A stretch of DNA of 64,000 nt from Haliotis rubra. Its lineage: Eukaryota. Shown one piece after another: positions 8,506 to 50,898 of this stretch. The DNA is taken from NCBI RefSeq assembly GCF_003918875.1, contig NW_025767002.1:372001-436000 (forward strand), in the 5' to 3' direction. The stretch's first letter is position 1. Every line of letters starts with the position of its first letter. Below the pieces are notes generated by a model. That model had not been told where the DNA came from. It was given only the letters and a program-made list of their open reading frames with translations, and searched no databases. A program made the translations under genes and the position numbers.

Positions 8506-9078
8506 TTAAGATTTGTTTCCCCTGAACAATTTGGTAAAACGACGAAAGAATGATTTTGACTCTTGCACATTTTGTTTCTGATTACATTTTTCGACCATAC
8601 CGACAGTACAGAATGAGATTACTTTGAGAGAGTTCACGATGTCTTGTTGACTTATTGTCTTGTTTAGGAGACACAGTGTGGTCAAAGCACGAGCTCTGTG
8701 TAGCCCCTGACATCTGAACAAGTCCAACGCCCTCTCCAGCTCCAGAATGTACACACAGTCTTTCAGTTCTCAACATGTCCACCTCCTTCAACAAGCGGTC
8801 CACCTGCTCCCCGAGGGACACTTTCTCATCCGACAGTTGTCTGATTTGTGTCTTGAAATGTTGGTTCTCCATTTTCAGACATCTTGAACGGAATCGAGCA
8901 TCTCGTAGGTCAGCCCGGAGAGTGTCCACCTCGGCCAGGACAGCCGTCAGCTGCGCGTGGAGCTCGTGCTCTTTGACATGTTGTTGGTCCTCTTGACAAC
9001 AGTCCCATTGGAATGGAGGCTGGGGCCGAATAGGTCTTGGTTTTATCGTGACGTGTTTGGGAACCATATCGTGGAACT
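8506..9078 (-). pseudogene. family copy A exon 3, with a 2-bp deletion near 8615 that frameshifts the C-terminus
   Basis: Acceptor TTTTCAG. Length is 573 nt versus 575 in copy I. The frame now stops at 8582, and the normal tail KSFFRRFTKLFRGNKS is out of frame. Confidence 0.75.
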
Positions 9079-9275
9079 CTGAAAACATAATTCGAATTAA
9101 GTACATAATCAATCCAAACGTAAGTCGTAAAAATTGGGACAAACACATCTACTGTGACTAAAAAAACCAAAATGAACAACAAAAAATCGAAAAGAAATAT
9201 AACAGTTGATACAGAAACCATTTTGGAAATGAAGTTGCTGGGATAGGAAATTAAACATGTTCACGAAACACACAC

Positions 9276-9404
9276 CTTTCAGTTCCTTGTGTTCGAAACA
9301 CTCCGCCACCTTGAAATGAAACCCCTCACACTCGGACATGGGCAGACGTCCGGCGACTGGTTTTGGTTTTATTGTGACGTGTTTGGGAACCGCATCATGA
9401 ATCT
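9276..9404 (-). CDS. family copy A exon 2 (129 nt, phase 1-1)
   Basis: AG/GT bounded; IHDAVPKHVTIKPKPVAGRLPMSECEGFHFKVAECFEHKELK. Confidence 0.7.
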
Positions 9405-9654
9405 CTGAAATAACAGAATTTGGTAAAGATTAAATAAATGACAAATGGAAAGCAAATATCGCATATTCATCATTCCTATGAGTGAGTGAGTTTAGTTTTA
9501 TGCCACCTTTAGCAATATTCCAGCAATCTTCCCTATGATATGCAGGAAGTAGTAGAAATAGATTGTCAGACCCTTTTCAGCTGAAACAAACGAAGTTATA
9601 GGGATGAACTTTGTTATATATATAAGTATATTATTACATATACAGAACGCTTAC

Positions 9655-9742
9655 CTGTCGGTTCTGTAAGTGCAAAACACTCCGCCACCTCGGGATCAAA
9701 CCCCTCACACTCGGACACGGTCAGACGTTTGGTGACTGGCAT
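9655..9742 (-). CDS. family copy A exon 1 (88 nt)
   Basis: ATG at 9742; MPVTKRLTVSECEGFDPEVAECFALTEPT; donor GTAAGC. Confidence 0.7.
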
Positions 9743-9821
9743 AATCTTGAGATAATCTCGATAAATGAAGAGCGTACTGCAGAGCTGCTGTAGCTGGCTG
9801 AGACAATGTCAGATAATGGCG

Positions 9822-9850
9822 TGACGTCACAATATCAACTAATGATGTCA
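9822..9850 (-). promoter_or_regulatory. CRE dyad upstream of copy A
   Basis: TGACGTCA at 9822-9829 and TGATGTCA at 9843-9850. Position is conserved in the paralogs. Confidence 0.45.
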
Positions 9851-11196
9851 TAGCGATCTCCAGTCGGTAGTTTCCGTTTGGATTATCCATCTTCGACATA
9901 TTTCGCCCTGATCGTGTTCCGATTGTGACATGTCAGCTTTAACATACAATGCTCACTAGATGCTCCTTTATCTTCCGCAAGATGATGATACTTTTTTCTG
10001 AACCATCATTATATCATGAACAAATAACAAAAATTAAATGAATGAATAGGAGAAATTTCCATGTGGTTTTTTTCGAATGACTTTGTTTTCTGGAAGGGAT
10101 TATTTGAACTGTGTGCAATGTGATATTGTCATCAGTGAATTGGCATTTCCCATTTCTGTTCCGATTGCGACATATAAGCCTTAACATATATAAAATGATC
10201 ATAAAATGATTTTTGTTCTGTGGTATAATGTTGTTACTTCTCCTAAAATATCATATTTTAGCACATACCTATTGATTATTCATGACATTACCCTAAAACC
10301 TGTAAAAGGAACTTAATGCAATGTAAACTGTAATTTTGATATCTCTCCAGAATTACAGTGATTTACAAATTTGAACTTTATAAGCTTTTTCAACCAACAA
10401 CTTGAAAAGTATTTTGTTCAACCATACCTTGAACACATTTGAATGGATTGTTTTCAATTTTGGGGATCACCCTCCATATCTATAGGAGAGATGCATTGTA
10501 TTTTGTAATTTTAATTTATATAATGTTTAAGTTGCATCTCTTGAACTCAAAGTCAAAGTTGTTGATATTAACAATTATCTAATGGATTATTTTCAGATTT
10601 GAGTAATGGATTCTTTGTTTATAGGAAAGGTGCTGTACAACGTTTGATACAGATCTACTATGTGACCATTTTTTATTTATTGTTGTACAGCTGAAGTTGG
10701 GAGTCGGGGGTAATAGTGAGCGGTGCTCGCGTTTCTCTGGCCTGTTTGAATTGTGAGCTATGTGATCGGTGGTTTGTCCTTTTCTCAATTGTTCTTTTAT
10801 CTCTAAATATATGCTTGCTCAGAAATGCCTGATTGGAATGTTTATAAAATTAATAGGTAAAAAGCCCCTTCTGTGTTACAGGTAAAGTGAATGAGTGAGC
10901 TGGGTGAAGGCCGCCCTGAATAATGTTTCAGTTAAGTTGCGAGTGCCAAACGTTTGATAAAAGTTATGCAATATGAAAGTTCAGTATCTCTTCTAGCTTC
11001 TGGCTTCCATAGACGACATTGATGCATGGAAACATGCATAGCCTTCCTAATCAGTCGTCCATGTCTTGAAAGGTGAAATTTGTATGGAAATTTGTTTCTT
11101 TAACATTCTAACCGTCTTTCTTAATAAATTATATTTTACGACAATAATATATGGAAGTTAATGTTAATTATGAGGAATGTCCTCTAAAGCCATAAG

Positions 11197-13050: not shown

Positions 13051-13169
13051 GTACTGCTTTCTGGCGAGGAGGCTGAGCTGTACACACTGACTGTTGTTAA
13101 AGGACTCTATGCGACCTATACTGCATGAATATTCTACGCGTCTCTATTGATAACTTAAACTTATCTTAA

Positions 13170-15672: not shown

Positions 15673-16464
15673 TATGTGTCATTTCCTATTCCCTCTGTTC
15701 CTGTGTAGGCCAAGGTGTTCTTTTTACGTGCCTGTGCATCTTGTGCATCTTGCTACCGTATGTCTTAGGTTACGTTCCCCTTTACGCCAACGCATGGTAT
15801 CACTACTCTGGTCGCAAACAAACAAATGTATTAGATAACTGAAACAAACTGAACTGCAATATTACGAACCACCATTTCTCCATGACATTTTCATGCAAGC
15901 TGACAATTTCGAACGTAAGCGTGCATTAAAGTTTCCGAAGAGGCGTTATTGCGCTGTACATTCGTTCCATGTACACAAACCAGCATTATAATGGAGTAAC
16001 TATAACAATCAAACAGTAATTTTGAAAAATATTTGAAATTTCATATAGCGATATTACATATGCGTTTCTTTTTCTTTTTTTTTGAGTGTACATGATATCC
16101 GATTTCCGTGTGTTATTGAATATGTAGCCTGAATTTCAGTCGAAACGGATGAAATTACTTGCACTGTGTAGCATTATGAACCAGTGAAGCATAGGAACAT
16201 ATTGTGAGCCAATTGAAAATATTATTATTTTTTTTAAAATTATTTAATTTCAATGGTTTTATTGTCAGAAAGTCCCTGTTACAAGATCGAGGATCACCTC
16301 CAGGGAAAGGGTGGCCCTCATTTGTACAGTATAAAAGCTTACTAGTAGAAATTCTGACATTGTCTAAAACAAAAAGAAACTCATTAACTCTCACATTCAT
16401 GCTAATACTGTTGTGAGTTTAAAATAAACAGCCAGCTTTTACTATGTGTCTGCTTTTCACTTAT

Positions 16465-16630
16465 GGGACGGTGGTGTAGCCTAGTGGTTAAAGCGTTCGC
16501 TCATCACGCCGAAGACCCGGGTTCGATTCCCCATATGGGTACAGTGTGTGAAACTCATTTCTGGTGTCCCCCGCAGTGATATTGCTGGAATATTGCTAAA
16601 ATCGGCATAAAACCAAACTCACTCACTCAC
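16465..16630 (+). mobile_element. SINE family A, at the breakpoint of the 2.85-kb tandem unit
   Basis: A/B boxes; TSD CTTTTCACTTAT. Confidence 0.85.
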
Positions 16631-18055
16631 TTTTCACTTATACTTAGGCAAGACTAACTGAAAGGTGGATGATAGAACGCCCACTTTGTGTAATATTTAT
16701 TGAGTTTATGTCTGCTTGAGAAACTAATTTTCTCAATAGAATACCTTTGTTCACACCATCAATGTGTTTTACCCCCTTGGGATACTCTTAAATGCTATTT
16801 CCTGTATTTTGTGACTCTTCGTGTTGGATTGCTTTTGTAACAAATTCTGTTTATTTATTAATTATATATTTTAGTGATGTATAAATATACATATATATGT
16901 TTCACCAACACATTTTCGACTTTCATTCAAGAATCATCTATCGCTTGTTTTCAAGGTAAACCATACATAACATCTTCGACATTCTACAGCTTGAATTAGT
17001 TTCTGCATAGGTGGTAACCTTGAGGATTGCTTATTCTTTAGATTCTGTTTGTAAGATGTCCTACTGTATATGTGAGCAACTAATTTACTTCTCTAAAGGT
17101 AGTTTCGCCCCTAGAACCTCACATATATACTACTACCTGACTAACATCAATTGGTCCAAATGCGTCAGAACTTCATGACAAATATCAGACAATCAGTTCA
17201 TTAATAGATCTATGAAAAAGCTAAACTGTTGCTTTGCTATTTATTTGATACAGTCGATACAGATAGGCGAACTAGCTATTCCCCAAACCTATTTTCCACA
17301 TGTTGAAGATTTTCCCTATGGTGTCTGACGTGTTCCCTATTCTTATGACTATCGGATGTTCCTGGGTATGTTCAGGTGAATAGTTGACGTGCCTGTGCAT
17401 GTGTTACTGCCATTGGGAGGCATGATACGTTCTCCTATTCTTAAACACCTGGTATCACCTCTGTTTATTAATGATTTACAATCACATACTTATGAAACAG
17501 TTGCAACCGTTCAACTGACGTTAGGCAGAAACTGGTTAAAGCTTTCAATCTTAATGCGTCCAAGAGTTCGATTCCCAATATTGAATGAATCACTGCCACC
17601 ATACTTGAACAATACTGCTAAAATTGGAGTAATATACTGAGGGAAATAAATAATGAAACACCACTTCATGTCAGTGTTCCTTTATTTATTCTCAGACTCT
17701 CCCCACGGCGCTATTCAAAACTGGTGATGAAAACTGGAAAAGGAACGCTTGAATTTTCCTGTGTTTCTTTATTTGTTTCTCTCTGTATGTCGAAGCAACA
17801 CAGGAAAGAATGCCTGAGTGAAGTGTGGTGATGTTAGTTTCCTATATGTTCATGTTGATCTATATCTTCTTGCTGTGTGCCCAGGGAGAGATTCGGGGTT
17901 AGAAAAAGACCCCATAAAACATATGCTTGACATTTGAGACCACCAAACAACTATGGTTGTTAGGCTCGGTGACTTGGTTAAGTGGGTGTCATCTAATATC
18001 AAACAGAGTACAGACATGGATTATTGCTTACAATATCAATCACTGGATTTACAGT

Positions 18056-18190
18056 CAGTGAGTTAAGTTTTACGCCGCTTTTAGCAATATTCCAGTAATG
18101 GGCTTCACACATTGTACCCATGTGGGGAATCGAACCCGGGCCATCGGCGTGACGAACGAACGCTTTAACCACTAGGCTACCCCACCGCTT
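18056..18190 (-). mobile_element. SINE family A with internal deletion, downstream of exon 3; also at ~20904, 25833, 34196, 37047 and 39897
   Basis: TSD CACTGGATTTACA. Confidence 0.8.
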
Positions 18191-18361
18191 CCACTGGATT
18201 TACAAGCCGTAGCAGGAACATGTCTGAGCGTGGTGTTAAACAGCAACCATACAACTTATCTTGTAGCTGTTAGACGCAGACATGTGTATACAAACAACTG
18301 AACCATTGCTTATGAATTGTACCAGTTGTTATTTTCATCAATGAAAAAGGATTGAATTACA

Positions 18362-18954
18362 TTAGGATTTGTTTCTTCTGAACAGTTTGGTAAAACGATG
18401 AAAGATTGATTTTGGCTTTTGTACATTTCGTTTCTGATTACAATTTTCGATCACACTGGCTGTACTGAATGACATATGCTTCTTTGATGTGAGATTATTT
18501 TGAGAGAGTTCATGATGTCTTGTTGACTTATTGTCTTGTTTAGGAGACACAATGTGGTCAATGCACGAGGTCTGTGTAGCCCCTGACATCTGAACAAGTC
18601 CAACACCTTCTCCAGCTCCAGAATGTACACCCAGTCTTTCAGCTCTCAACATGTCCACCTCCTTCAACAAGCGGTCCACCTGCTCCCCGAGGGACACTTT
18701 CTCATCCGAGAGTTGTCTGGCTTGTGTCTTGAAATGTTGATTCTTCATTTTCAGACATTTGGAGCGGTGTCGAGCATCTCGTAGGTCAGCCCGGAGAGTG
18801 TCCACCTCGGCCAGGACAGCCGTCAGCTGCACGTGGAGTTCGTGCTCTTTGACATTTTGTTTATCCTCTTGACAACAGTCCCATTGGAATGGAGGCTGGG
18901 GTCGAATAGGTCTTGGTTTTATCGCGACGTGTTTGGGAACCATATCGTGGAACT
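18362..18954 (-). CDS. family copy B: orphan intact exon 3, a possible alternative last exon of copy C
   Basis: Acceptor TTCCAG and 593 nt open to TAA. Only ~140 bp of intron 2 lies upstream. Confidence 0.55.
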
Positions 18955-19691
18955 CTGGAAACGCAATAATCCAATTTAGTATGTGATCAATCAAATCATA
19001 AGCCTACAAAAGCACATATATACATCTTCTTTGTTGAATCAGAGACCATGTAATCTATTATATGGTCTCTGGTTGAAATCAGGAAAAAGGTAGAAAGGCC
19101 CTGGTTCCATTCCCCATATGGGTACATTGTATGAAACTCATTTCTGGTGTCCCCCGCAGTGATATTGCTGGAATGTTGCTAAAATCGGCATAAAACCAAA
19201 CTCACTCACTCACATTTCACTTATACTTACTAAGACTAACTGAAAGGTGGATGATAGAACGCCCACTATGTGTAAAATTTATTGAGTTTATATCTGCTTG
19301 AGAAACTAATTTTCTCAATAGAATACCTTTGTTCACACACTTTCTTAAAACCATCAATGTGTTTTACCCCCTTGAGATACCCTTAAATGCTATTTCCTGT
19401 ATTTTGGGACTCTTCAAGTTGGATTGCTTTTGTAACAAATTCTGTTTATATATTTATTATATATTTTAGTGATGTATAAATATACATATATATGTTTCAC
19501 CAACACATTTTCGACTTTCATTCAAGAATCATCTACCGCTTGTTTTCAAGGTAAACCATACATAACATCTTCGACATTCTACAGCTTGAATTAGTTTCTG
19601 CATAGGTGGTAACCTTGAGGTTTGCTTATTCTTTCGATTCTGTGTAAGATGTCCTACTTTATATGTGAGCAACTGATTTACTTCTCTAAAG

Positions 19692-19947
19692 GTGAGGTGA
19701 GGTGAAATTGGGTTTAACGTCGTGCTTGAAAATATTTCGCTCATATGACGACGTGCATGCGTGTGTATGTGTAAGTGCGGCTGCTTGTACTAGCCCAGAC
19801 TTAAGCTGGTTTTATAGTGCTAGCCCACTGAGATACCATGCCACAGTGAAGCATGAATTCAGACACATTATACTGACTCCGAGCCAACCAGTCCTTGTCG
19901 TACCCTCTCCGGGCGGAAGCTCTAACCACTAAACCACGGAGGCGGTC
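19692..19947 (-). mobile_element. SINE family C with internal deletion; duplicated at ~32985, 35837 and 38686
   Basis: TSD CTAAAGGT; empty site at 17093. Confidence 0.85.
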
Positions 19948-21212
19948 TCCCTAAAGGTAGTTTCGCCGCTAGAACATCACATTTATACTACTACCTGACT
20001 AACATCAATTGGTCCAAATGCGTCAGAACTTCATGACAGATATCACACAATCAGTTCATTAATAGATCTATGAAAAAGCTAAACTGTTGCTTTGCTATTC
20101 ATTTGATACAGTCGATACAGATAGGCGAACTAGCTATTCCCAAACCTATTTTCCACATGTTGAAGATTTTCCCTATGGTGTCTGACGTGTTCCCTATTCT
20201 TATGAGTATCAGATGTTCCTGGGTATGTTCAGGTGAATAGTTGACGTGCCTGTGCATGTGTTACTGCCATTGGGAGGCATGATACGTTCTCCTATTCTTA
20301 AACACCTGGTATCACCTCTGTTTATTAATGATTTACAATCACATACTTATGAAACAGTTGCAACCGTTCAACTGACGTTAGGCAGAAACTGGTTAAAGCT
20401 TTCAATCTTAATGCGTCCTCGATTCCCAATATTGAATGAATCACTGCCACCATACTTGAACAATACTGCTAAAATTGGAGTAATATACTGAGGGAAATAA
20501 ATAATGAAACACCACCTCATGTCAGTGTTCCTTTATTTATTCTCAGACTCCCCCCATAGCGCTATTCAAAACTGGTGATGAAAACTGGAAAAGGAACGCT
20601 TGAATTTTCCTGTGTTTCTTTATTTGTTTCTCTCTGTATATCGAAGGAACCCAGGAAAGAATGCCTGAGTGAAGTGTGATGATGTTAGTTTCCTATATGT
20701 TCATGTTGATCTATATCTTCTTGCTGTGTGCCCAGGGAGAGATTCGGGGTTAGAAAAAGACCCCATAAAACATATGCTTGACATTTGAGACCACCAAACA
20801 ACTATGGTTGTTAGGCTCGGTGACTTGGTTAAGTGGGTGTCATCTAATATCAAACAGAGTACAGACATGGATTATTGCTTACAGTATCAATCACTGGATT
20901 TACAGTGAGTGAGTTAAGTTTTACGCCGCTTTTAGCAATATTCCAGTAATGGGCTTCACACATTGTACCCATGTGGGGAATCGAACCCGGGCCATCGGCG
21001 TGACGAACGAACGCTTTAACCACTAGGCTACCCCACCGCTTCCACTGGATTTACAAGCCGTAGCAGGAACATGTCTGAGCGTGGTGTTAAACAGCAACCA
21101 TACAACTTATCTTGTAGCTGTTAGACGCAGACATGTGTATACAAACAACTGAACCATTGCTTATGAATTGTACCAGTTGTTATTTTCATCAATGAAAAAG
21201 GATTGAATTACA

Positions 21213-21805
21213 TTAGGATTTGTTTCTTCTGAACAGTTTGGTAAAACGATGAAAGATTGATTTTGGCTTTTGTACATTTCGTTTCTGATTACAATTTTCG
21301 ATCACACTGGCTGTACTGAATGACATATGCTTCTTTGATGAGAGATTATTTTGAGAGAGTTCATGATGTCTTGTTGACGTATTGTCTTGTTTAGGAGACA
21401 CAATGTGGTCAAAGCACGAGGTCTGTGTAGCCCCTGACCTCTGAACAAGTCCAACACCTTCTCCAGCTCCAGAAAGTACACCCAGTCTTTCAGCTCTCAA
21501 CATGTCCACCTCCTTCAACAAGCGGTCCACCTGCTCCCCGAGGGAGACTTTCTCATCCGACAGTTGTCTGACTTGTGTCTTGAAATGTTGATTCTTCATT
21601 TTCAGACATTTGGAGCGGTGTCGAGCATCTCGTAGGTCAGCCCGGAGAGTGTCCACCTCGGCCAGGACAGCCGTCAGCTGCACGTGGAGCTCGTGCTCTT
21701 TGACATTTTGTTTATCCTCTTGACAACAGTCCCATTGGAATGGAGGCTGGGGTCGAATAGGTCTTGGTTTTATCGCGACGTGTTTGGGAACCATATCGTG
21801 GAACT
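21213..21805 (-). CDS. family copy C exon 3 (coiled coil plus basic amphipathic tail)
   Basis: 593 nt. The spliced CDS is 88+129+593 = 810 nt, 269 aa. Confidence 0.75.
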
Positions 21806-22103
21806 CTGGAAACGCAATAATCCAATTTAGTATGTGATCAATCAAATCATAAGCCTACAAAAGCACATATACATCTTCTTTGTTGAATCAGAGACCATGT
21901 AATCTATTATATGGTCTCTGGTTGAATAAGGAAAAAAGGTAGAAACATAACAGTTGATACAGAAAGTTATTTTTCAAATGAATCATAGGCCTAAAAAGCA
22001 CATGTACAACCGTGTGTTGAATAAAGGAAAATAATAGAAACCATTGTTTTCAAATAAAGTTGGAAGGATACGAAAATTAAAGGTATTTATGACACACACA
22101 CAC

Positions 22104-22232
22104 CTTTAAGTTCTCTGTGTGCGAACCACTGTGCCACCTCGGAATCAAACCCCTCACACTCGGACATGGTCAGACGTCTGGCGACTGGTTTTGGTTTTAT
22201 TGTGACGTGTTTGGGAACCGCATCATGAATCT
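22104..22232 (-). CDS. family copy C exon 2
   Basis: 129 nt, AG/GT; IHDAVPKHVTIKPKPVARRLTMSECEGFDSEVAQWFAHRELK. Confidence 0.75.
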
Positions 22233-22347
22233 CTGAAATAACAATAACAGAATTTGGTACAAAATCAAACCAGTATGACAAGTGGAAAGCAAATATATCA
22301 AGCCTATGAGATGCAGAAATATAGTGTCTGGGTCTTAGACCCGTTTC

Positions 22348-22597
22348 AGTGAGTGAGTGAGTGTGTTTAGTTTTACTCCGCACTCAGCAATATTCCAGTT
22401 ATATGGCGGCGGTCTGTAAATAATCGAGTCTGGACCAGACAATCCGGTGATCAACAGCTTGCGCATCGACCTATGCAATTGAGATACGATGACATGTGTC
22501 AACTAATTCAGCGAGCCTGACCACCCAATCCCGTTAGTTGCCTCTTACGACAAGCATGAGTTACTGAAGGTCAATTCTAACCCGGATCGTCACGGAT
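22348..22597 (-). mobile_element. SINE family B in intron 1 of copy C; also 41331-41572 in copy G
   Basis: Full-length match to family B. Confidence 0.8.
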
Positions 22598-22646
22598 ATT
22601 CAGCTGTAGGTATGAAGTCTATTATTATATATAAGAGCACGCTTAC

Positions 22647-22734
22647 CTGTCGGTTCTGTACGTGCAAAACACTCGGCCACCTCGGGATCAAATCCCTCAC
22701 ACTCAGACATGGTCAGACGTTTGGTGACTGGCAT
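22647..22734 (-). CDS. family copy C exon 1
   Basis: ATG at 22734, 88 nt, donor GTAAGC. Confidence 0.75.
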
Positions 22735-22813
22735 AATCTTTGGATTATCTCGATAAATGAAGAGCGTACTGCAGTGCTGTTGTAGCTGGCTGAGACAATG
22801 TCAGACAATGGCG

Positions 22814-22842
22814 TGACGTCACAATATCACCGAATGACGTCA
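22814..22842 (-). promoter_or_regulatory. two perfect CRE palindromes 21 bp apart
   Basis: TGACGTCA at 22814 and 22835. Confidence 0.5.
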
Positions 22843-23684
22843 TAGCGATCTCCAGTCGGTAGTTTCCGTTTGGATTATCCGTTTTCGGCATATTTCGCCT
22901 CGATCGTGTTCCGATTGCGACATGTCAGCCTTAACATACAATGCTCACTAGATGCTCCTTTATCTTTGGTATGATGTCGATACTTTTTTCTGAACCATCA
23001 TTATATCATGAACAAATATGTCATCCTTACAAATATTAATTGAATGAATAGGAGATATTTTCATGTGTTTTTCCCGAATGAAATTGTTTTCCGGTAAGGG
23101 ATTATTCGAATTGTCATTGGTGAATTGACATTTCACATTTCTGTTCCGATTGCGACATATAACCCTTATAACATACATACATTGATCATTAAATGCTTTG
23201 TGCTCTGTGGTATAATATCGATATTTCTCACCTAAACATCATTATATAATAATTACATATCTATTGATTATTCATAACATTACCACAAAAAATTTAAAAG
23301 GAACTTAATGCAATGCAAATTGTGATTTTGACTTTTTCCCTCTCCAGAATTACAGCGATTTACAAAGTTGAACTGAAAAGGCTTTTCAAACAACAACTTG
23401 AAAAGTATTTTGTTCAACCAATACTTTGAACACATTTGAATTGATTGTTTTCAAATTTGGGGATCACCCTCCATATCTATAGGAGAGATGCAGTGCAAAG
23501 TTGTATTTTGCCATTTTAATTTTTCGACTTTTAAAATTGCATTTCTTGAACTCTGGAAAAAGTCAAAGTTGTTGATAATAACAATTATTTACTAAGTTGA
23601 TTATTTTCAGATTTGGGTAATGGATTCTTTGTTAATAGGAAAGGTGCAGTACAACATTTGATACAGACCTACTATTTCACAAAG

Positions 23685-24263
23685 CTAAATGAAAATACAC
23701 AACGGCGTAACTCCACGTGATGATATCCTACCCCTCATGTCAAATTTCGGGCTATGATTTGGGCGTTGGTAGATAGGTTTCAAGGTATCGTTTGTCCAAA
23801 TTTTGACAGAACTTTCATCAGAAAAGAAAACATTATCCCAATCTTGATTTTCGTGAGCCCTACACCAGTTTAAACGTCTTTTTTGTGCACCGTTCATCAG
23901 TGGTGAGGGAATTCCGCGCTTTTTCACCCAGTTAAGTCTTTGTAATTCTTGTCGAAGGGTTTCATGACATACCTGAGGACTTCCTCTATTAATCATCTCA
24001 TTTCTGATATTCTCAACGCTTTTCAATTTTCCCATACTCTCAATCTGACCAAGTCGCCGTCGATCCGTAGTTTTGAACTTCCTTGGCCTCCCTGCCCCTG
24101 TCTTGTACTCAATCCCAACCCCTGACTGAATATTCTTCAACGTTTTTGTATACTATAGACAGAGGAATGTCATGTCTACCAGCTAACTCTTTTGCATTTG
24201 CCACACCCTTTTAAAATCATCTGGAACCAGCTTACTTTTCTCTTTTGCTGTCAAATCTGCCAT
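23685..24263 (-). mobile_element. Tc1/IS630-like transposase pseudogene (relic 2), 3'-truncated
   Basis: MADLTAKEK start, GAGRPRK linker, RLNWCRAH..WDNVFFSDES and GRISSRG, with frameshifts. Confidence 0.85.
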
Positions 24264-26139: not shown

Positions 26140-26732
26140 TTAGGATTTGTTTCTTCTGAACAGTTTGGTAAAACGATGAAAGATTGATTTTGGCTTTTGT
26201 ACATTTCGTTTCTGATTACAATTTTCGATCACACTGGCTGTACTGAATGACATATGCTTCTTTGATGTGAGATTATTTTGAGAGAATTCATGATGTCTTG
26301 TTGACGTATTGTCTTGTTTAGGATACACAATGTGGTCAGAGCATGAGGTTTGTGTAGCCCCTGACCTCTGAACAAGTCCAACACCTTCTCCAGCTCCAGA
26401 AAGTGCAAACAATCTTTCAGTTCTCAACATGTCCACCTCCTTCAACAAGCGGTCCACCTGCTCCCTGAGGGAGACTTTCTCATCCGACAGTTGTCTGACT
26501 TGTGTCTTGAAATGTTGATTCTTCATTTTCAGACATTTGGAGCGGAGTCGAGCATCTCGTAGGTCAGCCCGGAGAGTGTCCACCTCGGCCAGGACAGCCG
26601 TCAGCTGCACGTGGAGCTCGTGCTCTTTGACTTGTTGTTTGTCCTCTTGACAACAGTCCCATTGGAATGGAGGCTGTGGCCGAATAGGTCTTGGTTTTAT
26701 CGTGACGTGTTTGGGAACCATGTCGTGGAACT
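26140..26732 (-). CDS. family copy D exon 3
   Basis: 593 nt open; the spliced product is 269 aa. Confidence 0.78.
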
Positions 26733-27030
26733 CTGGAAACACAATAATCCAATTTAGTATGTGATCAATCAAATCATAAGCCTACAAAAGCACATATACA
26801 TCTTCTGTGTTGAATCAGAGACCATATAATCTATTATATGGTCTCTGGTTGAATAAGGAAAAAAGGTAGAAACATAACAGTTGATACAGAAAGTTATTTT
26901 TCAAATGAATCGTAGGCCTAAAAAGCACATGTACAACCGTGTGTTGAATAAAGGAAAATAATAGAAACCATTGTTTTCAAATAAAGTTGGAAGGATACGA
27001 AAGTTAAAGGTATTTATGACACACACACAC

Positions 27031-27159
27031 CTTTCAGTTCTCTGTGTGCGAACCACTGTGCCACCTCGGAATCAAACCCCTCACACTCGGACATGGTCAG
27101 ACGTCTGGCGACTGGTTTTGGTTTTATTGTGACGTGTTTGGGAACTGCATCATGAATCT
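27031..27159 (-). CDS. family copy D exon 2
   Basis: 129 nt, AG/GT. Confidence 0.78.
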
Positions 27160-27385
27160 CTGAAATAACAATAACAGAATTTGGTAAAAAATTCAAACCA
27201 GTATGACAAGTGGAAAGCAAATACATCAAGCCTATGAAATACAGAAATATAGTGTCTGGATCTTAGACCCTTTTCAGTGAGTGAGTGTGTTTAGTTTTCG
27301 CCGCACTCGGCAATATTCCAGTTATATGTCGGCGAGACCCTTTTCAGCTTTTGGGATGATTCTATTATTGTATATACTGACTCAC

Positions 27386-27473
27386 CTGTCGGTTCTGTAC
27401 GTGCAAAACACTCCGCCACCTCGGGATCAAATCCCTCACACTCAGACATGGTCAGGCGTCTGGTGACTGGCAT
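27386..27473 (-). CDS. family copy D exon 1
   Basis: MPVTRRLTMSECEGFDPEVAECFARTEPT; donor GTGAGT. Confidence 0.78.
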
Positions 27474-34505: not shown

Positions 34506-35098
34506 TTAGGAGTTGTTTCTTCTGAACAGTTTGGTAAAACGATGAAAGATTGATTTTGGCTTTTGTACATTTCGTTTCTGATTACAATTTTCGATCACAC
34601 TGGCTGTACTGAATGACATATGCTTCTTTGATGAGAGATTATTTTGAGAGAGTTCATGATGTTTTGTTGACGTATTGTCTTGTTTAGGAGACACAATGTG
34701 GTCAATGCACGAGGTCTGTGTAGCCCCTGACCTCTGAACAAGTCCAACACCTTCTCCAGCTCCAGAATGTACACCCAGTCTTTCAGCTCTCAACATATCC
34801 ACCTCCTTCAACAAGCGGTCCACCTGCTCCCCGAGGGAGACTTTCTCATCCGAGAGTTGTCTGGCTTGTGCCTTGAAATGGTTATTCTTCATTTTCAGAC
34901 ATTTGGAGCGGTGTCGAGCATCTCGTAGGTCAGCCCGGAGAGTGTCCACCTCGGCCAGGACAGCCGTCAGCTACACGTGGAGCTCGTGCTCTTTGACATT
35001 TTGTTTATCCTCTTGACAACAGTCCCATTGGAATGGAGGCTGGGGTCGAATAGGTCTTGGTTTTATCGCGACGTGTTTGGGAACCATATCGTGGAACT
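34506..35098 (-). pseudogene. family copy E: orphan exon 3 with CAG>TAG nonsense codon
   Basis: Stop at 34971-34973. Confidence 0.75.
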
Positions 35099-37355: not shown

Positions 37356-37948
37356 TTAGGAGTTGTTTCTTCTGAACAGTTTGGTAAAACGATGAAAGAT
37401 TGATTTTGGCTTTTGTACATTTCGTTTCTGATTACAATTTTCGATCACACTGGCTGTACTGAATGACATATGCTTCTTTGATGAGAGATTATTTTGAGAG
37501 AGTTCATGATGTTTTGTTGACGTATTGTCTTGTTTAGGAGACACAATGTGGTCAATGCACGAGGTCTGTGTAGCCCCTGACCTCTGAACAAGTCCAACAC
37601 CTTCTCCAGCTCCAGAATGTACACCCAGTCTTTCAGCTCTCAACATATCCACCTCCTTCAACAAGCGGTCCACCTGCTCCCCGAGGGAGACTTTCTCATC
37701 CGAGAGTTGTCTGGCTTGTGCCTTGAAATGGTTATTCTTCATTTTCAGACATTTGGAGCGGTGTCGAGCATCTCGTAGGTCAGCCCGGAGAGTGTCCACC
37801 TCGGCCAGGACAGCCGTCAGCTACACGTGGAGCTCGTGCTCTTTGACATTTTGTTTATCCTCTTGACAACAGTCCCATTGGAATGGAGGCTGGGGTCGAA
37901 TAGGTCTTGGTTTTATCGCGACGTGTTTGGGAACCATATCGTGGAACT
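37356..37948 (-). pseudogene. family copy F: orphan exon 3 with the same nonsense codon
   Basis: Stop at 37821-37823; essentially identical to E. Confidence 0.75.
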
Positions 37949-40210: not shown

Positions 40211-40809
40211 TTAGGATTTGTTTCTTCTGAACAGTTTAAGTAAAACGATGAAAAGATTGATTTTGGCTTTTGTACATTTCGTTTCTGGATTACAATTTTC
40301 GATCACACTGGCTGTACTGAATGACATTTGCTTCTTTGATGAGAATTATTTTGAGAGTTCATGATGTTTTGTTGACGTATTGTCTTGTTTAGGAGACAAT
40401 ACTGTGGTCAATGCACGAGGTCTGTAGCCCCTGACCCTCTGAACAAGTCCAACACCTTCTCCAGCTCCAGAATGTACACCCAGTCTTTCAGCTCAAACAT
40501 ATCCACCTCCTTCAACAAGCGGTCCACCCACCTGCTCCCCTCGAGGGAGACTTTCTCACCCGAGAGTTGTCTGACTTGTGTCTTGAAATGGTTTATTCTT
40601 CATTTTCAGACATTTGGAGCGGTGTCGAGCATCTCGTAGGTCAGCCCGAGAGTGTCCACCTCGGCCAGGACAGCCGTCAGCTGCACGTGGAGCTCGTGCT
40701 CTTTGACATTTTGTTTATCCTCTTGACAACAGTCCCACTGGAATGGAGGCTGGGGTCGAATAGGTCTTGGTTTTATCGCGACGTGTTTGGGGAACCATAT
40801 CGTGGAACT
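40211..40809 (-). pseudogene. family copy G exon 3 with multiple indels (pseudogene or consensus errors)
   Basis: Many small indels relative to C, E and F. Confidence 0.6.
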
Positions 40810-41085
40810 CTGGAAACGCAATAATCCAATTTAGTATGTGATCAATCAAATCATAAGCCTACAAAAGCACATATACATCTTCTTTGTTGAATCAGAGACC
40901 ATGTAATCTATTATATGGTCTCTGGTTGAATAAGGAAAAAGGTAGAAACATAACAGTTGATACAGAAAGTTATTTTCAAAAGCACATGTACAACCGTGTG
41001 TTGAATAAAGGAAAATAATAGAAACCATTGTTTTCAAATAAAGTTGGAAGGATACGAAAATTAAAGGTATTTATGACACACACAC

Positions 41086-41214
41086 CTTTAAGTTCTCTGT
41101 GTGCGAACCACTGTGCCACCTCGGAATCAAACCCCTCACACTCGGACATGGTCAGACGTCTGGCGACTGGTTTTGGTTTTATTGTGACGTGTTTGGGAAC
41201 CGCATCATGAATCT
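41086..41214 (-). CDS. family copy G exon 2
   Basis: 129 nt intact, AG/GT. Confidence 0.65.
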
Positions 41215-41623
41215 CTGAAATAACAATAACAGAATTTGGTACAAAATCAAACCAGTATGACAAATGGAAAGCAAATACATCAAGCCTATGAGATGCAGAA
41301 ATATAGTGTCTGGGTCTTAGACCCTTTTCAGTGAGTGAGTGTGTTTTGTTTTACGCCGGACTCAGCAATAGTCCAGCTATATGGCGGCGGTCTGTAAATA
41401 ATCGAGTTTGGACCAGACAATCAGGTGATCAACAGCATGCGCATCGACCTATGCAATTGAGATACGATGACATGTGTAACTAATTCAGCGAGCCTGACCA
41501 CCCAATCCCGTTAGTTGCCTCTTACGACAAGCATGAGTTACTGAAGGTCAATTCTAACCAGGATCGTCACGGATATTCAGCTGTAGGTATGAAGTCTATT
41601 ATTATATATAAGAGCACGCTTAC

Positions 41624-41711
41624 CTGTCGGTTCTGTACGTGCAAAACACTCGGCCACCTCGGGATCAAACCCCTCACACTCGGACATGGTCAGACGTCTG
41701 GTGACTGGCAT
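41624..41711 (-). CDS. family copy G exon 1
   Basis: 88 nt intact. CRE dyad at 41791 and 41812. Confidence 0.65.
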
Positions 41712-42686
41712 AATCTTTGGATTATCTCGATAAATGAAGAGCGTACTGTAGTGCTGCTGTAGCTGGCTGAGACAATGTCAGACAATGGCGTGACGTCACA
41801 ATATCACCGAATGACGTCATAGCGATCTCCAGTCGGTAGTTTCTGTTTGATTATCCATTTCGGCATATTTCGCCTCGATCGTGTTCCGATTGCGACATGT
41901 CAACCTTTTAACATACAATGCTCACTAGATGCTCCTTTTAGCTTTGGTATGATGTCGATACTTTTTTCTGAACCATCATTATATCATGAACAAATATGTC
42001 ATCCTTACAAATATTAATTGAATGAATAGGAGATATTTTCATGTGTTTTTCCCGAATGAAATTGTTTTCCGGTAAGGGATTATTCGAATTGTTTGCAATG
42101 TGATATTGTCATCGGTGAATTGACATTTCACATTTTTTTCCGATTGCGACATATAACCCTTATAACATACATACATTGATAATTAAATGCTTTGCGCTCT
42201 GTGGTATAATATCGATATTTCTCACCTAAACTATCATTATATTATAATTACATATCTATTGATTATTCATAACATTACCACAAAACATTTAAAAGGAACT
42301 TAATGCAATGCAAATTGTGATTTTGACTTTTTCCCTCTCCAGAATTACAGCGATTTACAAAGTTGAACTGAAAAGGCTTTTTCAACCAACAACTTGAAAA
42401 GTATTTTGTTCAACCAATACTTTGAACACATTTGAATAGATTGTTTTCAAATTTGGGGATCACCCTCCATATCTATAGGAGAGATGCAGTGCAAAGTTGT
42501 ATTTTGCCATTTTAATTTTTCGACTTTTAAAATTGCATTTCTTGAACTCTGGAAAAAGTCAAAGTTGTTGATAATAACAATTATTTACTAAGTTGATTAT
42601 TTTCAGATTTGGGTAATGGATTCTTTGTTAATAGGAAAGGTGCAGTACAACATTTTTTTTTATACAGACCTACTATTTCACAAAGC

Positions 42687-43345
42687 TAAATGAAAATACA
42701 CAACGGCGTAACTCCACGTGATGATATCCTACCCCTCATGTCAAATTTCGGGCTATGTTTTGGGCGTTGGTAGATAAGTTTCAAGGTATCGTTTCTCCAC
42801 ATTTTCACATTTCGAAAAAAGCCAGACAGAACTTTCATCAGAAAAGCAAACATTATCCCAATCTTGATTTTCGTGAGCCCTACACCAGTTTAAACGTCTT
42901 TTTTGTGCACCGTTCATCAGTGGTGAGGGGATTCCTCGCTTTTTCACCCAGTTAAGTCTTTGTAATTTTTGTCGAAGGGTTTCATGACATACCTGAGGAC
43001 TTCCTCTATTAATCATCTCATTTCTGATATTCTCAACGCTTTTCAATTTCCCTACTCTCAATCTGACCAAGTCGCCGTTGATCCGTAGTTCTGAACTTCC
43101 TTGCCCTCCCTGCCCCTGTCTTGTACTCAATCCCAACCCCTGACTGAATATTCTTCAACGTTTTTGTATACTGTAGACAGAGGAATGTCATGTCTACTAG
43201 CTAACTCTTTTGCATTAGTCACACCCTTTCAAAATCATCTGTAACCAGCTTTCTTTTCTCTTTTTCTGTCAAATCTGCCATGTCAACAAAGGAAGCCGCC
43301 TGTTACACCAAGGGAGATAACTCTTGATGTAGTAAGGTTCATTCT
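42687..43345 (-). mobile_element. Tc1/IS630-like relic 2, paralog
   Basis: Matches 23685-24330. Confidence 0.8.
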
Positions 43346-43346
43346 T

Positions 43347-43568
43347 AATGTTGATTCTTCATTTTCAGACATTTGGAGCGGTGTCGAGCATCTCGTAGGT
43401 CAGCCCGGAGAGTGTCCACCTCGGCCAGGACAGCCGTCAGCTGCACGTGGAGGTCGTGCTCTTTGACATGTTGTTGGTCCTCTTGACAACAGTCCCATTG
43501 GAATGGAGGCTGGGGCCGAATAGGTCTTGGTTTTATCGTGACGTGTTTGGGAGCCATGTCGTGGAACT
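43347..43568 (-). pseudogene. family copy H: 5' part of exon 3 only
   Basis: Fused to Tc1 sequence at 43346. Exons 1-2 are deleted at a junction near 43727. Confidence 0.75.
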
Positions 43569-47896: not shown

Positions 47897-47984
47897 ATGC
47901 CAGTCACCAGACGTCTGACCATGTCCGAGTGTGAGGGGTTTGATCCCGAGGTGGCGGAGTGTTTTGCACGTACAGAACCGACAG
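47897..47984 (+). CDS. family copy I exon 1
   Basis: ATG at 47897, donor GTGAGC, CRE at 47786. Confidence 0.8.
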
Positions 47985-48951
47985 GTGAGCGTCGTTATGA
48001 GTCAACTCTGAATATTCACTTTTGCCATCCGGAAGACGTTTCAATGTCCCTTGTCATAGGTCAAACAGAACAAGGACATATTAATCCCTTGTAGCATTAC
48101 AATTCTAAACAAAACCTTTGAAATATAATATTTGAATTTTTATAAATATATACTTTCATGGATGCTGATATGTCTGTAAATTTGTTGAGTTAGTGTATGT
48201 GGTTTATAGGAATACAGAAAAGTGTACATATATGACTTGTTTAAGGAAATATACTGACGTACAAAATAAAGTACACATTTGGATTTGGAGGGATTATTTT
48301 TAAAAACAAACAAAGAAATAATTTTGACAAATCTTTGATTGCGCCTTACAACTCCGGAATTGGGTATGCTGTCTGTGGTGTTTAGCCAACACGAGCACAA
48401 TGTTTGTGACACGTATGTCACAAAAACGTTGGGTTTTTACATATATGGTAAACATCGGGTGGGTATTTTCTTTTGTGCTTCAGTTTATGTGTTGGTGTGT
48501 ATTATGCGTGTGAATGGGTGTATTAATTTTATGTTTGTTCACATTTAATCATCTGTTATCGAAATTGGCATACATATTTTATTGTATCATGCCGTGCTCT
48601 GTTTGATGTAAACATAACTTTTTTATATCCCATCAAGAATGGCATAACTCATCAAGTTCTAAAACCTATTCATGTTCTCTTTTCAAGTATAATCTTTCTG
48701 TGGAACCATAGCTTAGTGTTATTAACGTTAGTAAATTTCGCATTGTTCTTACACAGTTTCGTTGTGGTTCCCATCACTTTAATATTGAGACGGGTAGATA
48801 CACAAATAAGCCTAGATATCACTGGTTATGTGTGATAATGGATATATTCAAAACGGTTACCATTTCTTTTAAGTGTGTACTGCATACAGTTCTTTGGGCA
48901 CTTAATTTATTCCTGCCACGTTTTAAACATACCCTTCTTTGTCAAATTTCA

Positions 48952-49186
48952 GCAACCAATGCTTGCCACAAAAGGCGACTATGCTTGTCGTAAGAGGCGA
49001 CAAACGGGATCGGGTGGGCAGGCTCGCTGACTTGGTTGACACATGTCATCGGTTCCCAACTGCGCAGATCGATGCTCATGCTCTTGATCACTGGATTGTC
49101 TGGTCCAGACTCGATTATTTACAGACCTCGGCCATATAGCTGGAATATTGCTGAGTGCGGCGTAAAGCTAAACTCACTCACTCACT
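48952..49186 (+). mobile_element. SINE family B, 5'-truncated
   Basis: TSD CTTTGTCAAATTTCA. Confidence 0.85.
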
Positions 49187-49566
49187 CTTTGTCAAATTTC
49201 AATATATTGATGACCTCAAACAATACGTTTGTCATCAGAAATGTAGCAGTGTTTATTTATTATGCTGCAAAGCAATGCCAATCAAATATGGCTGCAAATA
49301 TGTAATATTTGTATTATAGGCCGATGGCTTACATACACTCTTTGAATAAAGAAATTTCTTGGTTCCTTTTTGGGTAATAAAGTGTTATCTTGTCCTATAA
49401 ATGATAATAGAGTTCAATCCTCCAATTTCAATTAGAAGACAATTCAGAATCAACCACTTTTATCCTACCATTTCTTTAATTATACAGTGTAGAAGTATAT
49501 GCCGTATTTTGGTTTCACTTTCCAACTGGATTGATTTTGTACTAAATCCAGATATTGTTATTTCAG

Positions 49567-49695
49567 GGTTTCATGATGCGGTTCCCAAACACGTCACAAT
49601 AAAACCAAAACCAGTCGCCAGACGTCTGACCATGTCCGAGTGTGAGGGGTTTGATTCCGAGGTGGCACAGTGGTTTGCACACAGAGAACTGAAAG
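49567..49695 (+). CDS. family copy I exon 2
   Basis: 129 nt, TTTTCAG acceptor and GTGTGT donor. Confidence 0.8.
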
Positions 49696-49836
49696 GTGTG
49701 TGTGTCATAAATACATTCAACTTTCGTATTTCGTGTGTGTTTGTTTTGAATCCGTTCAATTCTCATATTCTTGCAAGTTCATTCGAGAAAATAATAGTTT
49801 CTGCATCAACCGTTACTCATTGAATGCATATAGGCT

Positions 49837-50021
49837 CATAGGCGGATCCAGAGAGAGAGAGGGGGGGGGGGGGGTTGTTGTTGTTGCAGGGGTGCGCATC
49901 CCCCCTTTTGTCCTGAAAGTTTATTAAATGACCATTGAAACTCGGGTGAAAATGAAGTGTGCACCCCTCCTTTTCTCAATAGTGTGCACCCCCTTTTCTC
50001 AAAAAGCTGTATCCGCCCCTG
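49837..50021. mobile_element. MITE in intron 2 of copy I
   Basis: Imperfect TIR CATAGGCGGATCCAG/CTGTATCCGCCCCTG flanked by AGGCT direct repeats. Confidence 0.7.
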
Positions 50022-50323
50022 AGGCTGATGTCTCAGACTTGCCATAGAATCCATCATATGTTTTGGACATCATACGTTTTTTGGACGCCGGTGTTGCTCG
50101 TGATATAATGAAGAATGTTGCATCGCAAGACATGACAAATACTTGAATGAAGGCTTGTTGGTGTGTTTTTTGAAGATCAAGGAATCTTTTAGTCAGTGAG
50201 ATATTTTACAGTTGTTCACTTGACAGGAGAAACTATTTGTGGTTGTCTTCATCTCGCTCACTATCTTTTACATACGTAAATCCTACAATATCAGGATATA
50301 CACTCAGTTCGATCATTATTCAG

Positions 50324-50898
50324 AGTTCCACGATACGGTTCCCAAACACGTCACGATAAAACCAAGACCTATTCGTCCCCAGCCTCCATTCCAATGGGAC
50401 TGTTGTCAAGAGGACCAACAACAAGTCAAGGAGCACGAGCTCCGTGTGCAGCTGACGGCTGTCCTGGCCGAGGTGGACACTCTCCGGGCTGACCTACGAG
50501 ATGCTCGACTCCGTTCAAGATGTCTGAAAATGGAGAACCAACATTTCAAGACACAAATCAGACAACTGTTCGATGAGAAAGTGTCCCTCAGGGAGCAGGT
50601 GGACCGCTTGTTGAAGGAGGTGGACATGTTGAGAGCTGAACGACTGTGTGCACTTTCTGGAGCTGGAGAGGGTGTTGGACTTGTTCAGAGGTCAGGGGTT
50701 TCACAGACCTCGTGCTTTGACCACATTGTGTCTCCTAAACAAGACAATACGTCAACAAGACATCGTGAACTCCTTCAAAGCGATCTCTCATTCTGTACAG
50801 CCAGTGTGATCGAAAATTTTAATCAGAAACAAAATGTACAAAAGTCAAAATCATTCTTTCGTCGTTTTACCAAATTGTTTAGAAGAAACAAATCCTAA
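50324..50898 (+). CDS. family copy I exon 3
   Basis: 575 nt. The spliced CDS is 792 nt, 263 aa, ending KSFFRRFTKLFRRNKS. Confidence 0.8.

What the first reader, a model, noticed from the sequence alone, without database searches (positions are those of the whole stretch)
8506..50898. Rapidly duplicating cluster of an unrecognised coiled-coil gene family (nine copies or fragments)
Seen: conserved 88/129/575-593-nt exons with phase-1 GT-AG introns give 263-269-aa proteins in C, D and I. A, E, F, G and H are disrupted, and B is an orphan exon. The protein has two PVxRRLTMSECEGFDxEVA..FHDxVPKHVTIKP modules (each with an RRxT basophilic kinase motif), a Pro-rich PIRPQPP linker, a ~70-aa heptad coiled coil and a basic tail. 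By eye, amino-acid changes between copies are frequent. I recognise no known family. Inference: a lineage-specific birth-and-death family; a germline, conflict or defence role is plausible but unproven.
Basis: partly seen in the sequence, partly recalled or inferred. Interest (0 to 1): 0.8.

Follow-up and report, generated by a model that had tools for sequence, protein, structure and literature searches.

The report
Abalone-only leucine-zipper gene cluster
This stretch of the blacklip abalone genome holds a recently expanded tandem cluster (three intact genes, six broken or partial copies) of an unstudied gene family found only in abalones; it encodes small, mostly disordered proteins built around a leucine zipper, and it evolves fast but shows no evidence of positive selection.

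Summary
The window is Haliotis rubra. It carries nine copies or fragments of a three-exon gene (88/129/575-593 nt, phase-1 GT-AG introns). C, D and I are intact and match the RefSeq models LOC124284101, LOC124284102 and LOC124284122 exon by exon.

- A's exons 1 and 2 are intact. Its only break is a 2-nt deletion late in exon 3.
- E and F, like B, are orphan last-exon units, and they share one TAG.
- G's breaks are about 13 small indels confined to exon 3, possibly assembly error.

Pfam, PDB sequences, the ESM Atlas, two word searches and an exhaustive profile search of 1.84 billion proteins found relatives only in four Haliotis species, all unnamed. In the genome the family lies in two tandem clusters on one contig plus four single, weaker matches elsewhere, so it is not a transposon. 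H. asinina has only a head-to-head pair at this locus, so B-H are a H. rubra-lineage expansion.

The protein has no signal peptide or membrane span. It is disordered except for a ten-heptad zipper with an invariant core Asn, which suggests a parallel dimer. Exon-3 omega is 0.51 and neutrality is rejected, so evolution is fast but positive selection is not shown.

Function is inferred only: a phospho-regulated dimeric adaptor.

The parts
8506..9742 (-). Copy A (RefSeq LOC124284119, model P0005): exon 1 9655-9742, exon 2 9276-9404, exon 3 8506-9078. Exons 1 and 2 are open with AG/GT. In exon 2 the kinase site is lost (RRLT>GRLP). Exon 3 has a 2-nt deletion that gives an early stop and removes the basic tail. 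Positional orthologue of H. asinina P0007.
18362..18954 (-). Copy B: orphan exon 3 with an open frame (196 codons) and an intact acceptor AG. It lies in a 2.85-kb last-exon unit downstream of gene C. It differs from C's exon 3 by 9 changes (3 synonymous, 6 non-synonymous).
21213..22734 (-). Copy C, intact gene = LOC124284101 (P0002, 269 aa): exon 1 22647-22734, exon 2 22104-22232, exon 3 21213-21805.
26140..27473 (-). Copy D, intact gene = LOC124284102 (P0024, 269 aa): exon 1 27386-27473, exon 2 27031-27159, exon 3 26140-26732.
34506..35098 (-). Copy E: orphan exon-3 unit with a premature TAG at codon 42. No exon 1 or 2 of its own.
37356..37948 (-). Copy F: orphan exon-3 unit whose translation is identical to E's, with the same TAG, so the stop predates the E/F duplication.
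40211..41711 (-). Copy G: exon 1 41624-41711 and exon 2 41086-41214 are intact. Exon 3 40211-40809 carries about 13 small indels, several in short homopolymer runs, confined to the exon region. Either a pseudogene or a local assembly error.
43347..43568 (-). Copy H: 222-nt 5' stub of exon 3 with its acceptor. No exon 1 or 2 was found for it.
47897..50898 (+). Copy I, intact gene = LOC124284122 (P0023 isoform X1, 263 aa; P0001 isoform X2, 220 aa, lacks exon 2): exon 1 47897-47984, exon 2 49567-49695, exon 3 50324-50898. Head-to-head with the minus-strand copies. Positional orthologue of H. asinina P0003.
16245..21945 (-). Two tandem 2.85-kb units (about 140 nt of intron 2 with the acceptor, exon 3, and 3' flank), 98% identical to each other. 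The same unit occurs three times at 32378-40948.

Best explanation
This is a genuine, abalone-restricted, tandemly duplicated protein-coding gene family. RefSeq already predicts it, but nobody has characterised it. The ancestral locus was a head-to-head gene pair, as H. asinina still has. In the H. rubra lineage the minus-strand member was copied repeatedly, partly as whole genes and partly as 2.85-kb last-exon units. Most of the new copies are already broken, and gene conversion keeps copies within a species alike. The product is an intracellular protein of about 265 aa. Residues 1-98 are disordered and carry one to three copies of a short conserved module: [RK]RLT[MV]SE, a basophilic-kinase plus CK2-type site, then CEGFD.EV..CF, FHD.VPKHVTIKP and P.R..PPF.WD. 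The centre is a ten-heptad leucine zipper with an invariant Asn at a core 'a' position. By the GCN4/bZIP rule this specifies an in-register parallel dimer. A disordered Ser/Thr-rich spacer follows, then a basic, Phe-rich amphipathic tail. Inferred mechanism (not shown): a zipper-mediated homo- or heterodimer that presents two or more copies of the N-terminal docking and phosphorylation motif. The basic tail would attach it to an acidic surface such as membrane, calmodulin or nucleic acid. In short, a phospho-regulated scaffold or adaptor whose motif valency is set by the symmetric cassette exon 2. Shown: the genes, structure, taxonomic range, duplication history, average purifying selection and zipper register. 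Inferred: dimerisation, phosphorylation, tail binding and any cellular role.
For: Gene reality: the exon translations equal the RefSeq models. The same 88/~125-129/~590-606-nt exon structure with open frames is seen in H. rufescens, H. asinina and H. cracherodii. ML omega for exon 3 is 0.51 and omega=1 is rejected (2dlnL=37.8). Omega is 0.19 within cluster 2 and 0.40 between H. rubra and H. rufescens. Not a transposon: the whole-genome scan finds the family only in two tandem clusters on contig C2112 plus four single, weaker matches on other contigs. Restricted range: profile HMMER over 1.84 billion representatives gave only Haliotis proteins plus one repeat-driven bacterial hit, and the word searches gave only Haliotis. 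History: the 2.85-kb units are 96-98.6% identical. Synteny with H. asinina shows A and I as the ancestral pair and B-H as a 38-kb expansion. Within-species dS is 0.02-0.15 against 0.20-0.29 to H. asinina. Protein: AF2 places one confident helix at 99-182 and the rest scores below pLDDT 50. The maximum 19-residue hydropathy is 0.8, so there is no signal peptide or membrane span. Heptad a/d positions are the most conserved (entropy 0.23) and e/f the least (0.73/0.97), and Asn144 at 'a' is invariant in 38 of 38 sequences, deep paralogues included. Within exon 3, the N-terminal motif and the tail are generally the most constrained regions (omega 0.16-0.38).
Against: Support for the models is indirect: RefSeq isoforms and conservation. 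No Logan transcript-derived protein of this subfamily appeared in the clusters inspected. Within cluster 1, pairwise omega (0.4-1.0) cannot be told from 1 (Fisher p 0.08-0.8), and exon divergence roughly equals flank divergence. The newest copies may therefore be functionless. The RRLT site is absent from the deepest paralogues (P0017, P0018), so phosphorylation is not a superfamily feature. Dimerisation, kinase targeting and tail binding rest on motif rules recalled from the literature, not on tests made here.
Confidence: 0.6

Rival explanations
1. One reading: a reproductive, conflict or defence family whose copies are driven apart by positive selection, like the abalone fertilisation proteins lysin and sp18.
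For: Taxon-restricted, tandemly expanding, with species-specific copy sets. Omega is about 0.5, well above a typical conserved gene. The disordered spacer reaches omega 1.17 within cluster 1, on very few changes. Abalones are known for fast-evolving gamete proteins (own knowledge).
Against: Omega=1 is rejected in the direction of purifying selection. There is no signal peptide or membrane span, so the product is not a secreted or surface recognition protein. The variable positions are solvent-exposed zipper positions and disordered linker, as expected under relaxed constraint. There are no expression data.
Confidence: 0.15
2. Most of the window's cluster is non-functional duplication debris. 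Only the ancestral pair (I, and formerly A) or the second cluster 750 kb away carries the function. B-H are neutral, short-lived by-products of unequal crossing-over.
For: Six of nine copies are broken or partial. Within-cluster-1 omega is not distinguishable from 1. Exon-3 divergence between C and D (20 of 593 nt) is about equal to that of the 1.7-kb segment around it (2.9%). Cluster 2 is under clearly stronger constraint (omega 0.19). H. asinina manages with two genes here.
Against: C and D keep complete open frames and splice sites, and RefSeq models them as genes. B keeps an open 196-codon exon.
Confidence: 0.2
3. Part of the copy number and of the breaks is an assembly artefact: mis-resolved near-identical 2.85-kb repeats and unpolished long-read indels.
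For: Units are 98-100% identical. E and F give identical translations. G's defects are about 13 indels, several in short homopolymer runs, clustered in about 600 nt of a unit with few changes elsewhere. That pattern is atypical of pseudogene decay.
Against: The units differ by consistent substitutions that give a sensible tree. The window has no N gaps. A second cluster and the other species' assemblies show comparable arrays.
Confidence: 0.15
4. A transposon-borne ORF, for example an ORF1-like coiled-coil protein.
For: Coiled-coil proteins with basic tails occur as retrotransposon ORF1. Tc1/mariner remnants and SINE-like repeats lie between the copies.
Against: The genome holds only two tandem clusters plus four single, weaker matches, with no dispersed copies. 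The phase-1 introns are conserved in four species and synteny is conserved next to folliculin and CCDC137. No transposase, RT or RRM domain is associated. The mariner fragments are separate intergenic remnants.
Confidence: 0.02

Closest known systems
GCN4/bZIP-type parallel leucine zippers
   Same: Ten uninterrupted heptads with Leu (or V/A/F) at d, hydrophobic a positions, and one conserved buried Asn at an a position. A long single helix in the AF2 model.
   Different: There is no DNA-binding basic region immediately N-terminal to the zipper; that stretch is acidic and Pro-rich. The only basic segment is about 70 residues C-terminal to the zipper. Pfam bZIP_1 is hit by 2 of 19 members at E no better than 0.005 and is not among the families with E<=1 for the window's own exon 3.
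Abalone-restricted fast-evolving tandem gene families
   Same: Haliotis-only distribution, tandem duplication, species-specific copy sets, raised dN/dS.
   Different: Not secreted. Omega is significantly below 1. No link to gametes is shown, and there is no sequence or fold similarity.
MARCKS-type basic effector segment (own knowledge; analogy only)
   Same: The C-terminal KSKSFFRRFTKLFRRNK is a Lys/Arg, Phe and Ser cluster of the kind that binds acidic lipids or calmodulin and is switched by phosphorylation.
   Different: It sits at the extreme C-terminus of a zipper protein with no myristoylation signal. No homology exists and binding is untested.
Small phospho-regulated inhibitor or adaptor proteins with repeated RRxT sites (inhibitor-1/DARPP-32, G-substrate; own knowledge)
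   Same: A disordered region with a repeated basophilic-kinase consensus [RK]RLT, each preceded by a conserved K-H-V-T-I-K-P stretch.
   Different: No canonical RVxF motif and no Pfam hit to those families. A zipper is present. The site is absent in deep paralogues.

Membership tests
bZIP transcription factors (PF00170) | Basic DNA-contact region directly N-terminal to the leucine zipper, and a Pfam match above the gathering score | tested here: not met
   Only 2 of 19 members hit bZIP_1, best E 0.005, and bZIP_1 is not listed for the window's exon 3 at E<=1. The residues before the zipper are PPFQWDCCQEDKQNVKEHE, which are acidic.
bZIP-like parallel dimeric leucine zipper (structural class, not homology) | Uninterrupted heptads, Leu-rich d positions, conserved Asn at one a position | tested here: met
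   d positions are L112, V119, L126, A133, L140, F147, L154, L161, L168, L175. N144 at a is invariant in 38/38. a/d entropy is 0.23 against 0.73-0.97 at e/f. The helix spans 99-182 with pLDDT mostly above 90. The oligomeric state itself is not testable here.
TSC-22/dip/bun (PF01166) | Pfam match above the gathering score of 30 bits | tested here: not met
   14.3 bits, E 0.046, over 35 zipper residues only. Not among the recurrent hits across the 19 members.
Transposon ORF1 or accessory protein | Dispersed multi-copy distribution, linkage to RT or transposase, no conserved host introns or synteny | tested here: not met
   Two tandem clusters plus four single, weaker matches. Phase-1 introns are conserved in four species. 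Syntenic flanks are folliculin and CCDC137.
Lineage-restricted birth-and-death tandem gene family | Tandem paralogues of graded age, pseudogenes among them, species-specific expansions, no relatives outside the clade | tested here: met
   Absence outside Haliotis holds as far as the protein libraries reach. Other vetigastropod genomes could not be searched at the DNA level.
Positively selected reproductive or immune family | omega>1 overall or at a class of sites; gonad or immune expression | tested here: inconclusive
   Overall omega is 0.51, significantly below 1. Site-class tests were not possible and expression was not testable.

The most novel reading that the evidence does not exclude
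The family forms a paralogue-specific dimerisation network. The zipper's variable e/g/f positions would decide which of about 16 H. rubra paralogues pair. The cassette exon 2 (0-2 copies per transcript) and the tandem arrays of alternative last exons (B, E, F) would generate isoforms with different motif valency. Some isoforms would lack the zipper and tail and act as competitors. Together this would be an abalone-invented, kinase-gated signalling scaffold, perhaps used in gametes or larval settlement.
Probability: 0.08. Interest if true: 0.65.

Novelty: new member of a known kind. Interest (0 to 1): 0.3.

Why it matters
It adds one more clean, datable example of how a taxon-restricted gene family grows. 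A head-to-head pair expanded to nine units in one abalone lineage. A chimeric middle exon was made from the start of exon 3 and the body of exon 1, and last exons were duplicated as separate units. The family has no Pfam entry and no studied member, so a description and a family model would improve mollusc annotation. There is no evidence so far for a role that would interest people beyond abalone genomics.

Tried and rejected
- Pfam on each exon and on 19 family members gave only sub-threshold coiled-coil noise: TSC22, YabA, KASH_CCD, JIP_LZII, bZIP_1.
- PDB sequence search found nothing below E 0.35.
- ESM Atlas on P0002 and on the deep paralogue P0018 gave only generic coiled-coil clusters at scores of 0.91 or less with low shared-feature counts.
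- The profile search produced a 724-aa bacterial repeat protein (P0019). I rejected it as a chance match multiplied by nine repeats.
- A word search restricted to the N-terminal motif of P0017 found only P0017 itself.
- I did not run a fold search, because the model is one helix plus disorder.
- Paper searches by LOC identifiers and by topic found nothing relevant.
- The look-up of encoding contigs does not serve the window's own genome.
- The Logan contig for P0021 (DRR299178, 918 nt) covers about 60% of the protein length as one uninterrupted ORF, so it does not show splicing.
- My first reading of A's exon 2 as frameshifted came from coordinates one base off and is withdrawn.


Full report
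**Identity of the window.** Exon 3 of copy I is 100% identical to a Haliotis rubra RefSeq protein (LOC124284122 isoform X2). All other hits are 'uncharacterized' proteins of H. rubra, H. asinina, H. rufescens and H. cracherodii. The window is contig C2112:372001-436000 of the 1.38-Gb assembly and contains no N.

**Check of the observation.**
- A six-frame motif scan and BLAST of copy I's three exons against the window recover exactly nine loci.
- Translations and flanking dinucleotides show exons of 88, 129 and 575-593 nt, AG acceptors, GT donors and phase-1 introns.
- Each exon was searched by reference. For full-length work I used the database proteins P0002, P0024, P0023 and P0001.
- The exon translations of C, D and I are exact, ordered substrings of those proteins.
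- C, D and I are intact.
- A has intact exons 1 and 2. My earlier 'frameshift' in exon 2 was a one-base coordinate slip, corrected. A's exon 2 has lost the kinase site (GRLP for RRLT), and exon 3 has a 2-nt deletion that replaces the last ~30 residues, basic tail included, with a short out-of-frame end.
- B is an open 196-codon orphan exon 3.
- E and F are also orphan exon-3 units. Their translations are identical and share one CAG>TAG.
- G has good exons 1 and 2. Its exon 3 carries about 13 small indels, several in short homopolymer runs. Most of the unit's private indels and substitutions fall in or next to exon 3, and the rest of its 2.85-kb unit has few. That looks at least as much like an unpolished assembly patch as like decay.
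- H is a 222-nt stub of exon 3.

**Architecture of the array.**
- Self-comparison shows a 2.85-kb unit made of about 140 nt of intron 2 with the acceptor, exon 3, and about 2.1 kb of 3' flank (polyadenylation signals lie 590-680 nt past the stop). It is present twice at 16245-21945 and three times at 32378-40948, at 96-98.6% identity.
- A 7.3-kb block, 17093-24327, is repeated at 36098-43345 (96.4%).
- Exon 2 is a chimera. Its nt 4-46 match exon 3 nt 6-46, and its nt 45-129 match exon 1 nt 4-88.
- Because exon 2 is symmetric (phase 1/1), it behaves as a cassette. RefSeq lists isoforms of about 220-232, 263-275 and 318 aa in H. rubra and H. rufescens.

**Distribution.**
- A six-frame scan of the whole genome with P0002 finds the family in this cluster (380-423 kb of the contig) and in a second cluster of seven compact copies at 1,156-1,176 kb. 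The rest are four single, weaker matches on other contigs, down to 25% identity at the weakest. That pattern excludes a transposon.
- A profile of 14 members, run by HMMER against 1.84 billion representative proteins, returned six hits. Five are Haliotis proteins, including deep paralogues of 266-297 aa. The sixth is a 724-aa bacterial repeat protein whose score is a weak motif resemblance multiplied ninefold.
- A word search with a 19-member alignment that included the deep paralogues gave only Haliotis proteins. A search confined to the N-terminal motif of P0017 gave only P0017 itself.
- Pfam, PDB sequences and the ESM Atlas gave only coiled-coil noise.
- No paper mentions these loci.
- The family is therefore abalone-restricted as far as these libraries reach. 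Genomes of other vetigastropods could not be searched at the DNA level.

**History.**
- The same three-exon structure with open frames occurs in H. rufescens (three copies in L004), H. asinina (L005, L006) and H. cracherodii (three copies in L007).
- In H. asinina the orthologous locus is a head-to-head pair, P0007 on the minus strand and P0003 on the plus strand, 3.8 kb apart and next to folliculin. Collinear alignment makes A the positional orthologue of P0007 and I that of P0003. The 38 kb between A and I that holds B-H is thus an expansion in the H. rubra lineage.
- The second cluster lies next to CCDC137 in H. asinina, and H. cracherodii's cluster lies next to CCDC137 too.
- The protein tree puts each H. 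rubra cluster sister to its own H. asinina pair. It shows separate expansions in the two North Pacific species.
- Synonymous distances within cluster 1 are 0.02-0.15, against 0.20-0.29 to H. asinina. A and I (dS 0.056 over 150 codons) are closer to each other than to their positional orthologues. This indicates gene conversion between the divergent pair.

**Selection.**

| Comparison (Nei-Gojobori, exon 3) | omega |
|---|---|
| Within cluster 1 | 0.51 |
| Within cluster 2 | 0.19 |
| Between the two clusters | 0.56 |
| H. rubra vs H. rufescens | 0.40 |

- The N-terminal motif and the basic tail are generally the most constrained parts of exon 3 (0.16-0.38). The zipper is intermediate (0.43-0.78). 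The disordered spacer reaches 1.17 within cluster 1, on about ten changes.
- A GY+F3X4 model on 17 intact exon-3 sequences from four species gives omega 0.513. Fixing omega at 1 lowers lnL by 18.9.
- The family therefore evolves fast for a metazoan gene but under net purifying selection.
- Within cluster 1 alone, neutrality cannot be rejected (p 0.08-0.8). The youngest copies may be drifting.
- Site-wise tests were not possible.

**The protein.**
- AlphaFold2 on the family alignment gives one confident helix at residues 99-182, with pLDDT mostly above 90. Everything else scores below 50.
- There is no hydrophobic stretch: the maximum 19-residue Kyte-Doolittle mean is 0.8. The protein is soluble and intracellular.
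- The helix is a regular ten-heptad zipper. The d positions are L112, V119, L126, A133, L140, F147, L154, L161, L168 and L175.
- Positions a and d are the most conserved (entropy 0.23) and e and f the least (0.73 and 0.97). Asn144 at an a position is invariant in all 38 sequences, deep paralogues included.
- From established work on GCN4-type zippers (own knowledge), a buried a-position Asn favours an in-register parallel dimer.
- Across the superfamily, the conserved N-terminal features are D.EV...F, EF....P....I[KR]P...R..PPF.WD, a G.GEG turn after the zipper, and a basic amphipathic end.
- The [RK]RLT site with a following S..E is conserved in both modules in most copies of the four species. 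It is absent in the deepest paralogues.

**Mechanism (inferred).** The most likely reading is a dimeric zipper scaffold. It would display two to six copies of a short docking and phosphorylation module and be anchored through its basic tail. Exon-2 inclusion would set the valency. I put about 0.9 on the genetic and evolutionary description and about 0.35-0.4 on this mechanistic reading.

**What could not be done.** The evidence that the genes are real is indirect: RefSeq models with isoforms, conserved structure and frames in four species, and omega below 1.

**Verdict.** The interpretation as a lineage-specific birth-and-death family is supported. 'Unrecognised' should read 'predicted but uncharacterised'. 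The conflict, germline or defence idea has no support yet. This is an ordinary though tidy case of a taxon-restricted tandem family.

Noticed in passing
window 8-3631 and 3985-5070; L005:1-1161: A 19-nt minisatellite (190 copies, 80% matches) and an 86-nt array (12.7 copies, 96% matches). The 19-nt array is syntenic in H. asinina, where it lies under the 3' end of the folliculin gene model. It is therefore an old satellite, possibly within a 3' UTR, or the gene model is mis-called.
   Followed up: partly
window 49567-49695 and the other exon 2 copies: Exon 2 is a chimera of the first ~44 nt of exon 3 and nt 4-88 of exon 1. This is consistent with a deletion that fused two tandem gene copies. 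It is phase-symmetric, and some RefSeq isoforms skip or double it.
   Followed up: partly
window 16245-21945 and 32378-40948: Last-exon units of 2.85 kb, each with its own acceptor, are stacked downstream of genes C and G. B is open; E and F share a stop at codon 42. Whether they serve as alternative last exons is untested. If E or F were used, the product would lack the zipper and tail.
   Followed up: partly
window 40211-40809: About 13 small indels, several in short homopolymer runs, plus about 15 substitutions are confined to G's exon 3 inside a unit with few other changes. Possibly a local assembly or polishing error.
   Followed up: partly
window 23688-24140 and 42756-43136 (minus strand): ORFs with weak Tc1/mariner HTH_Tnp_Tc3_2 matches (E about 6e-4) lie upstream of C and G. 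They are transposon remnants carried along in the 7.3-kb duplication.
   Followed up: no
window about 6721, 19818, 33113, 35964, 38812, 51840, 57498, 58419: A dispersed repeat that translates to ...MLHCGMVSQWASTIKPA... occurs on both strands and is probably a SINE-like element. One copy lies inside each 2.85-kb unit.
   Followed up: no
G000:C2112:1155001-1180000 (L001-L003): A second cluster of seven copies with short introns lies 750 kb away. Four have intact exon 3. It is under stronger constraint (omega 0.19). Its proteins end in Cys rather than Ser, as in the other three species.
   Followed up: partly
window 8506-9742 versus 47897-50898: The head-to-head copies A and I are more alike (dS 0.056) than either is to its positional orthologue in H. 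asinina (0.20-0.22). This indicates gene conversion between inverted paralogues.
   Followed up: partly
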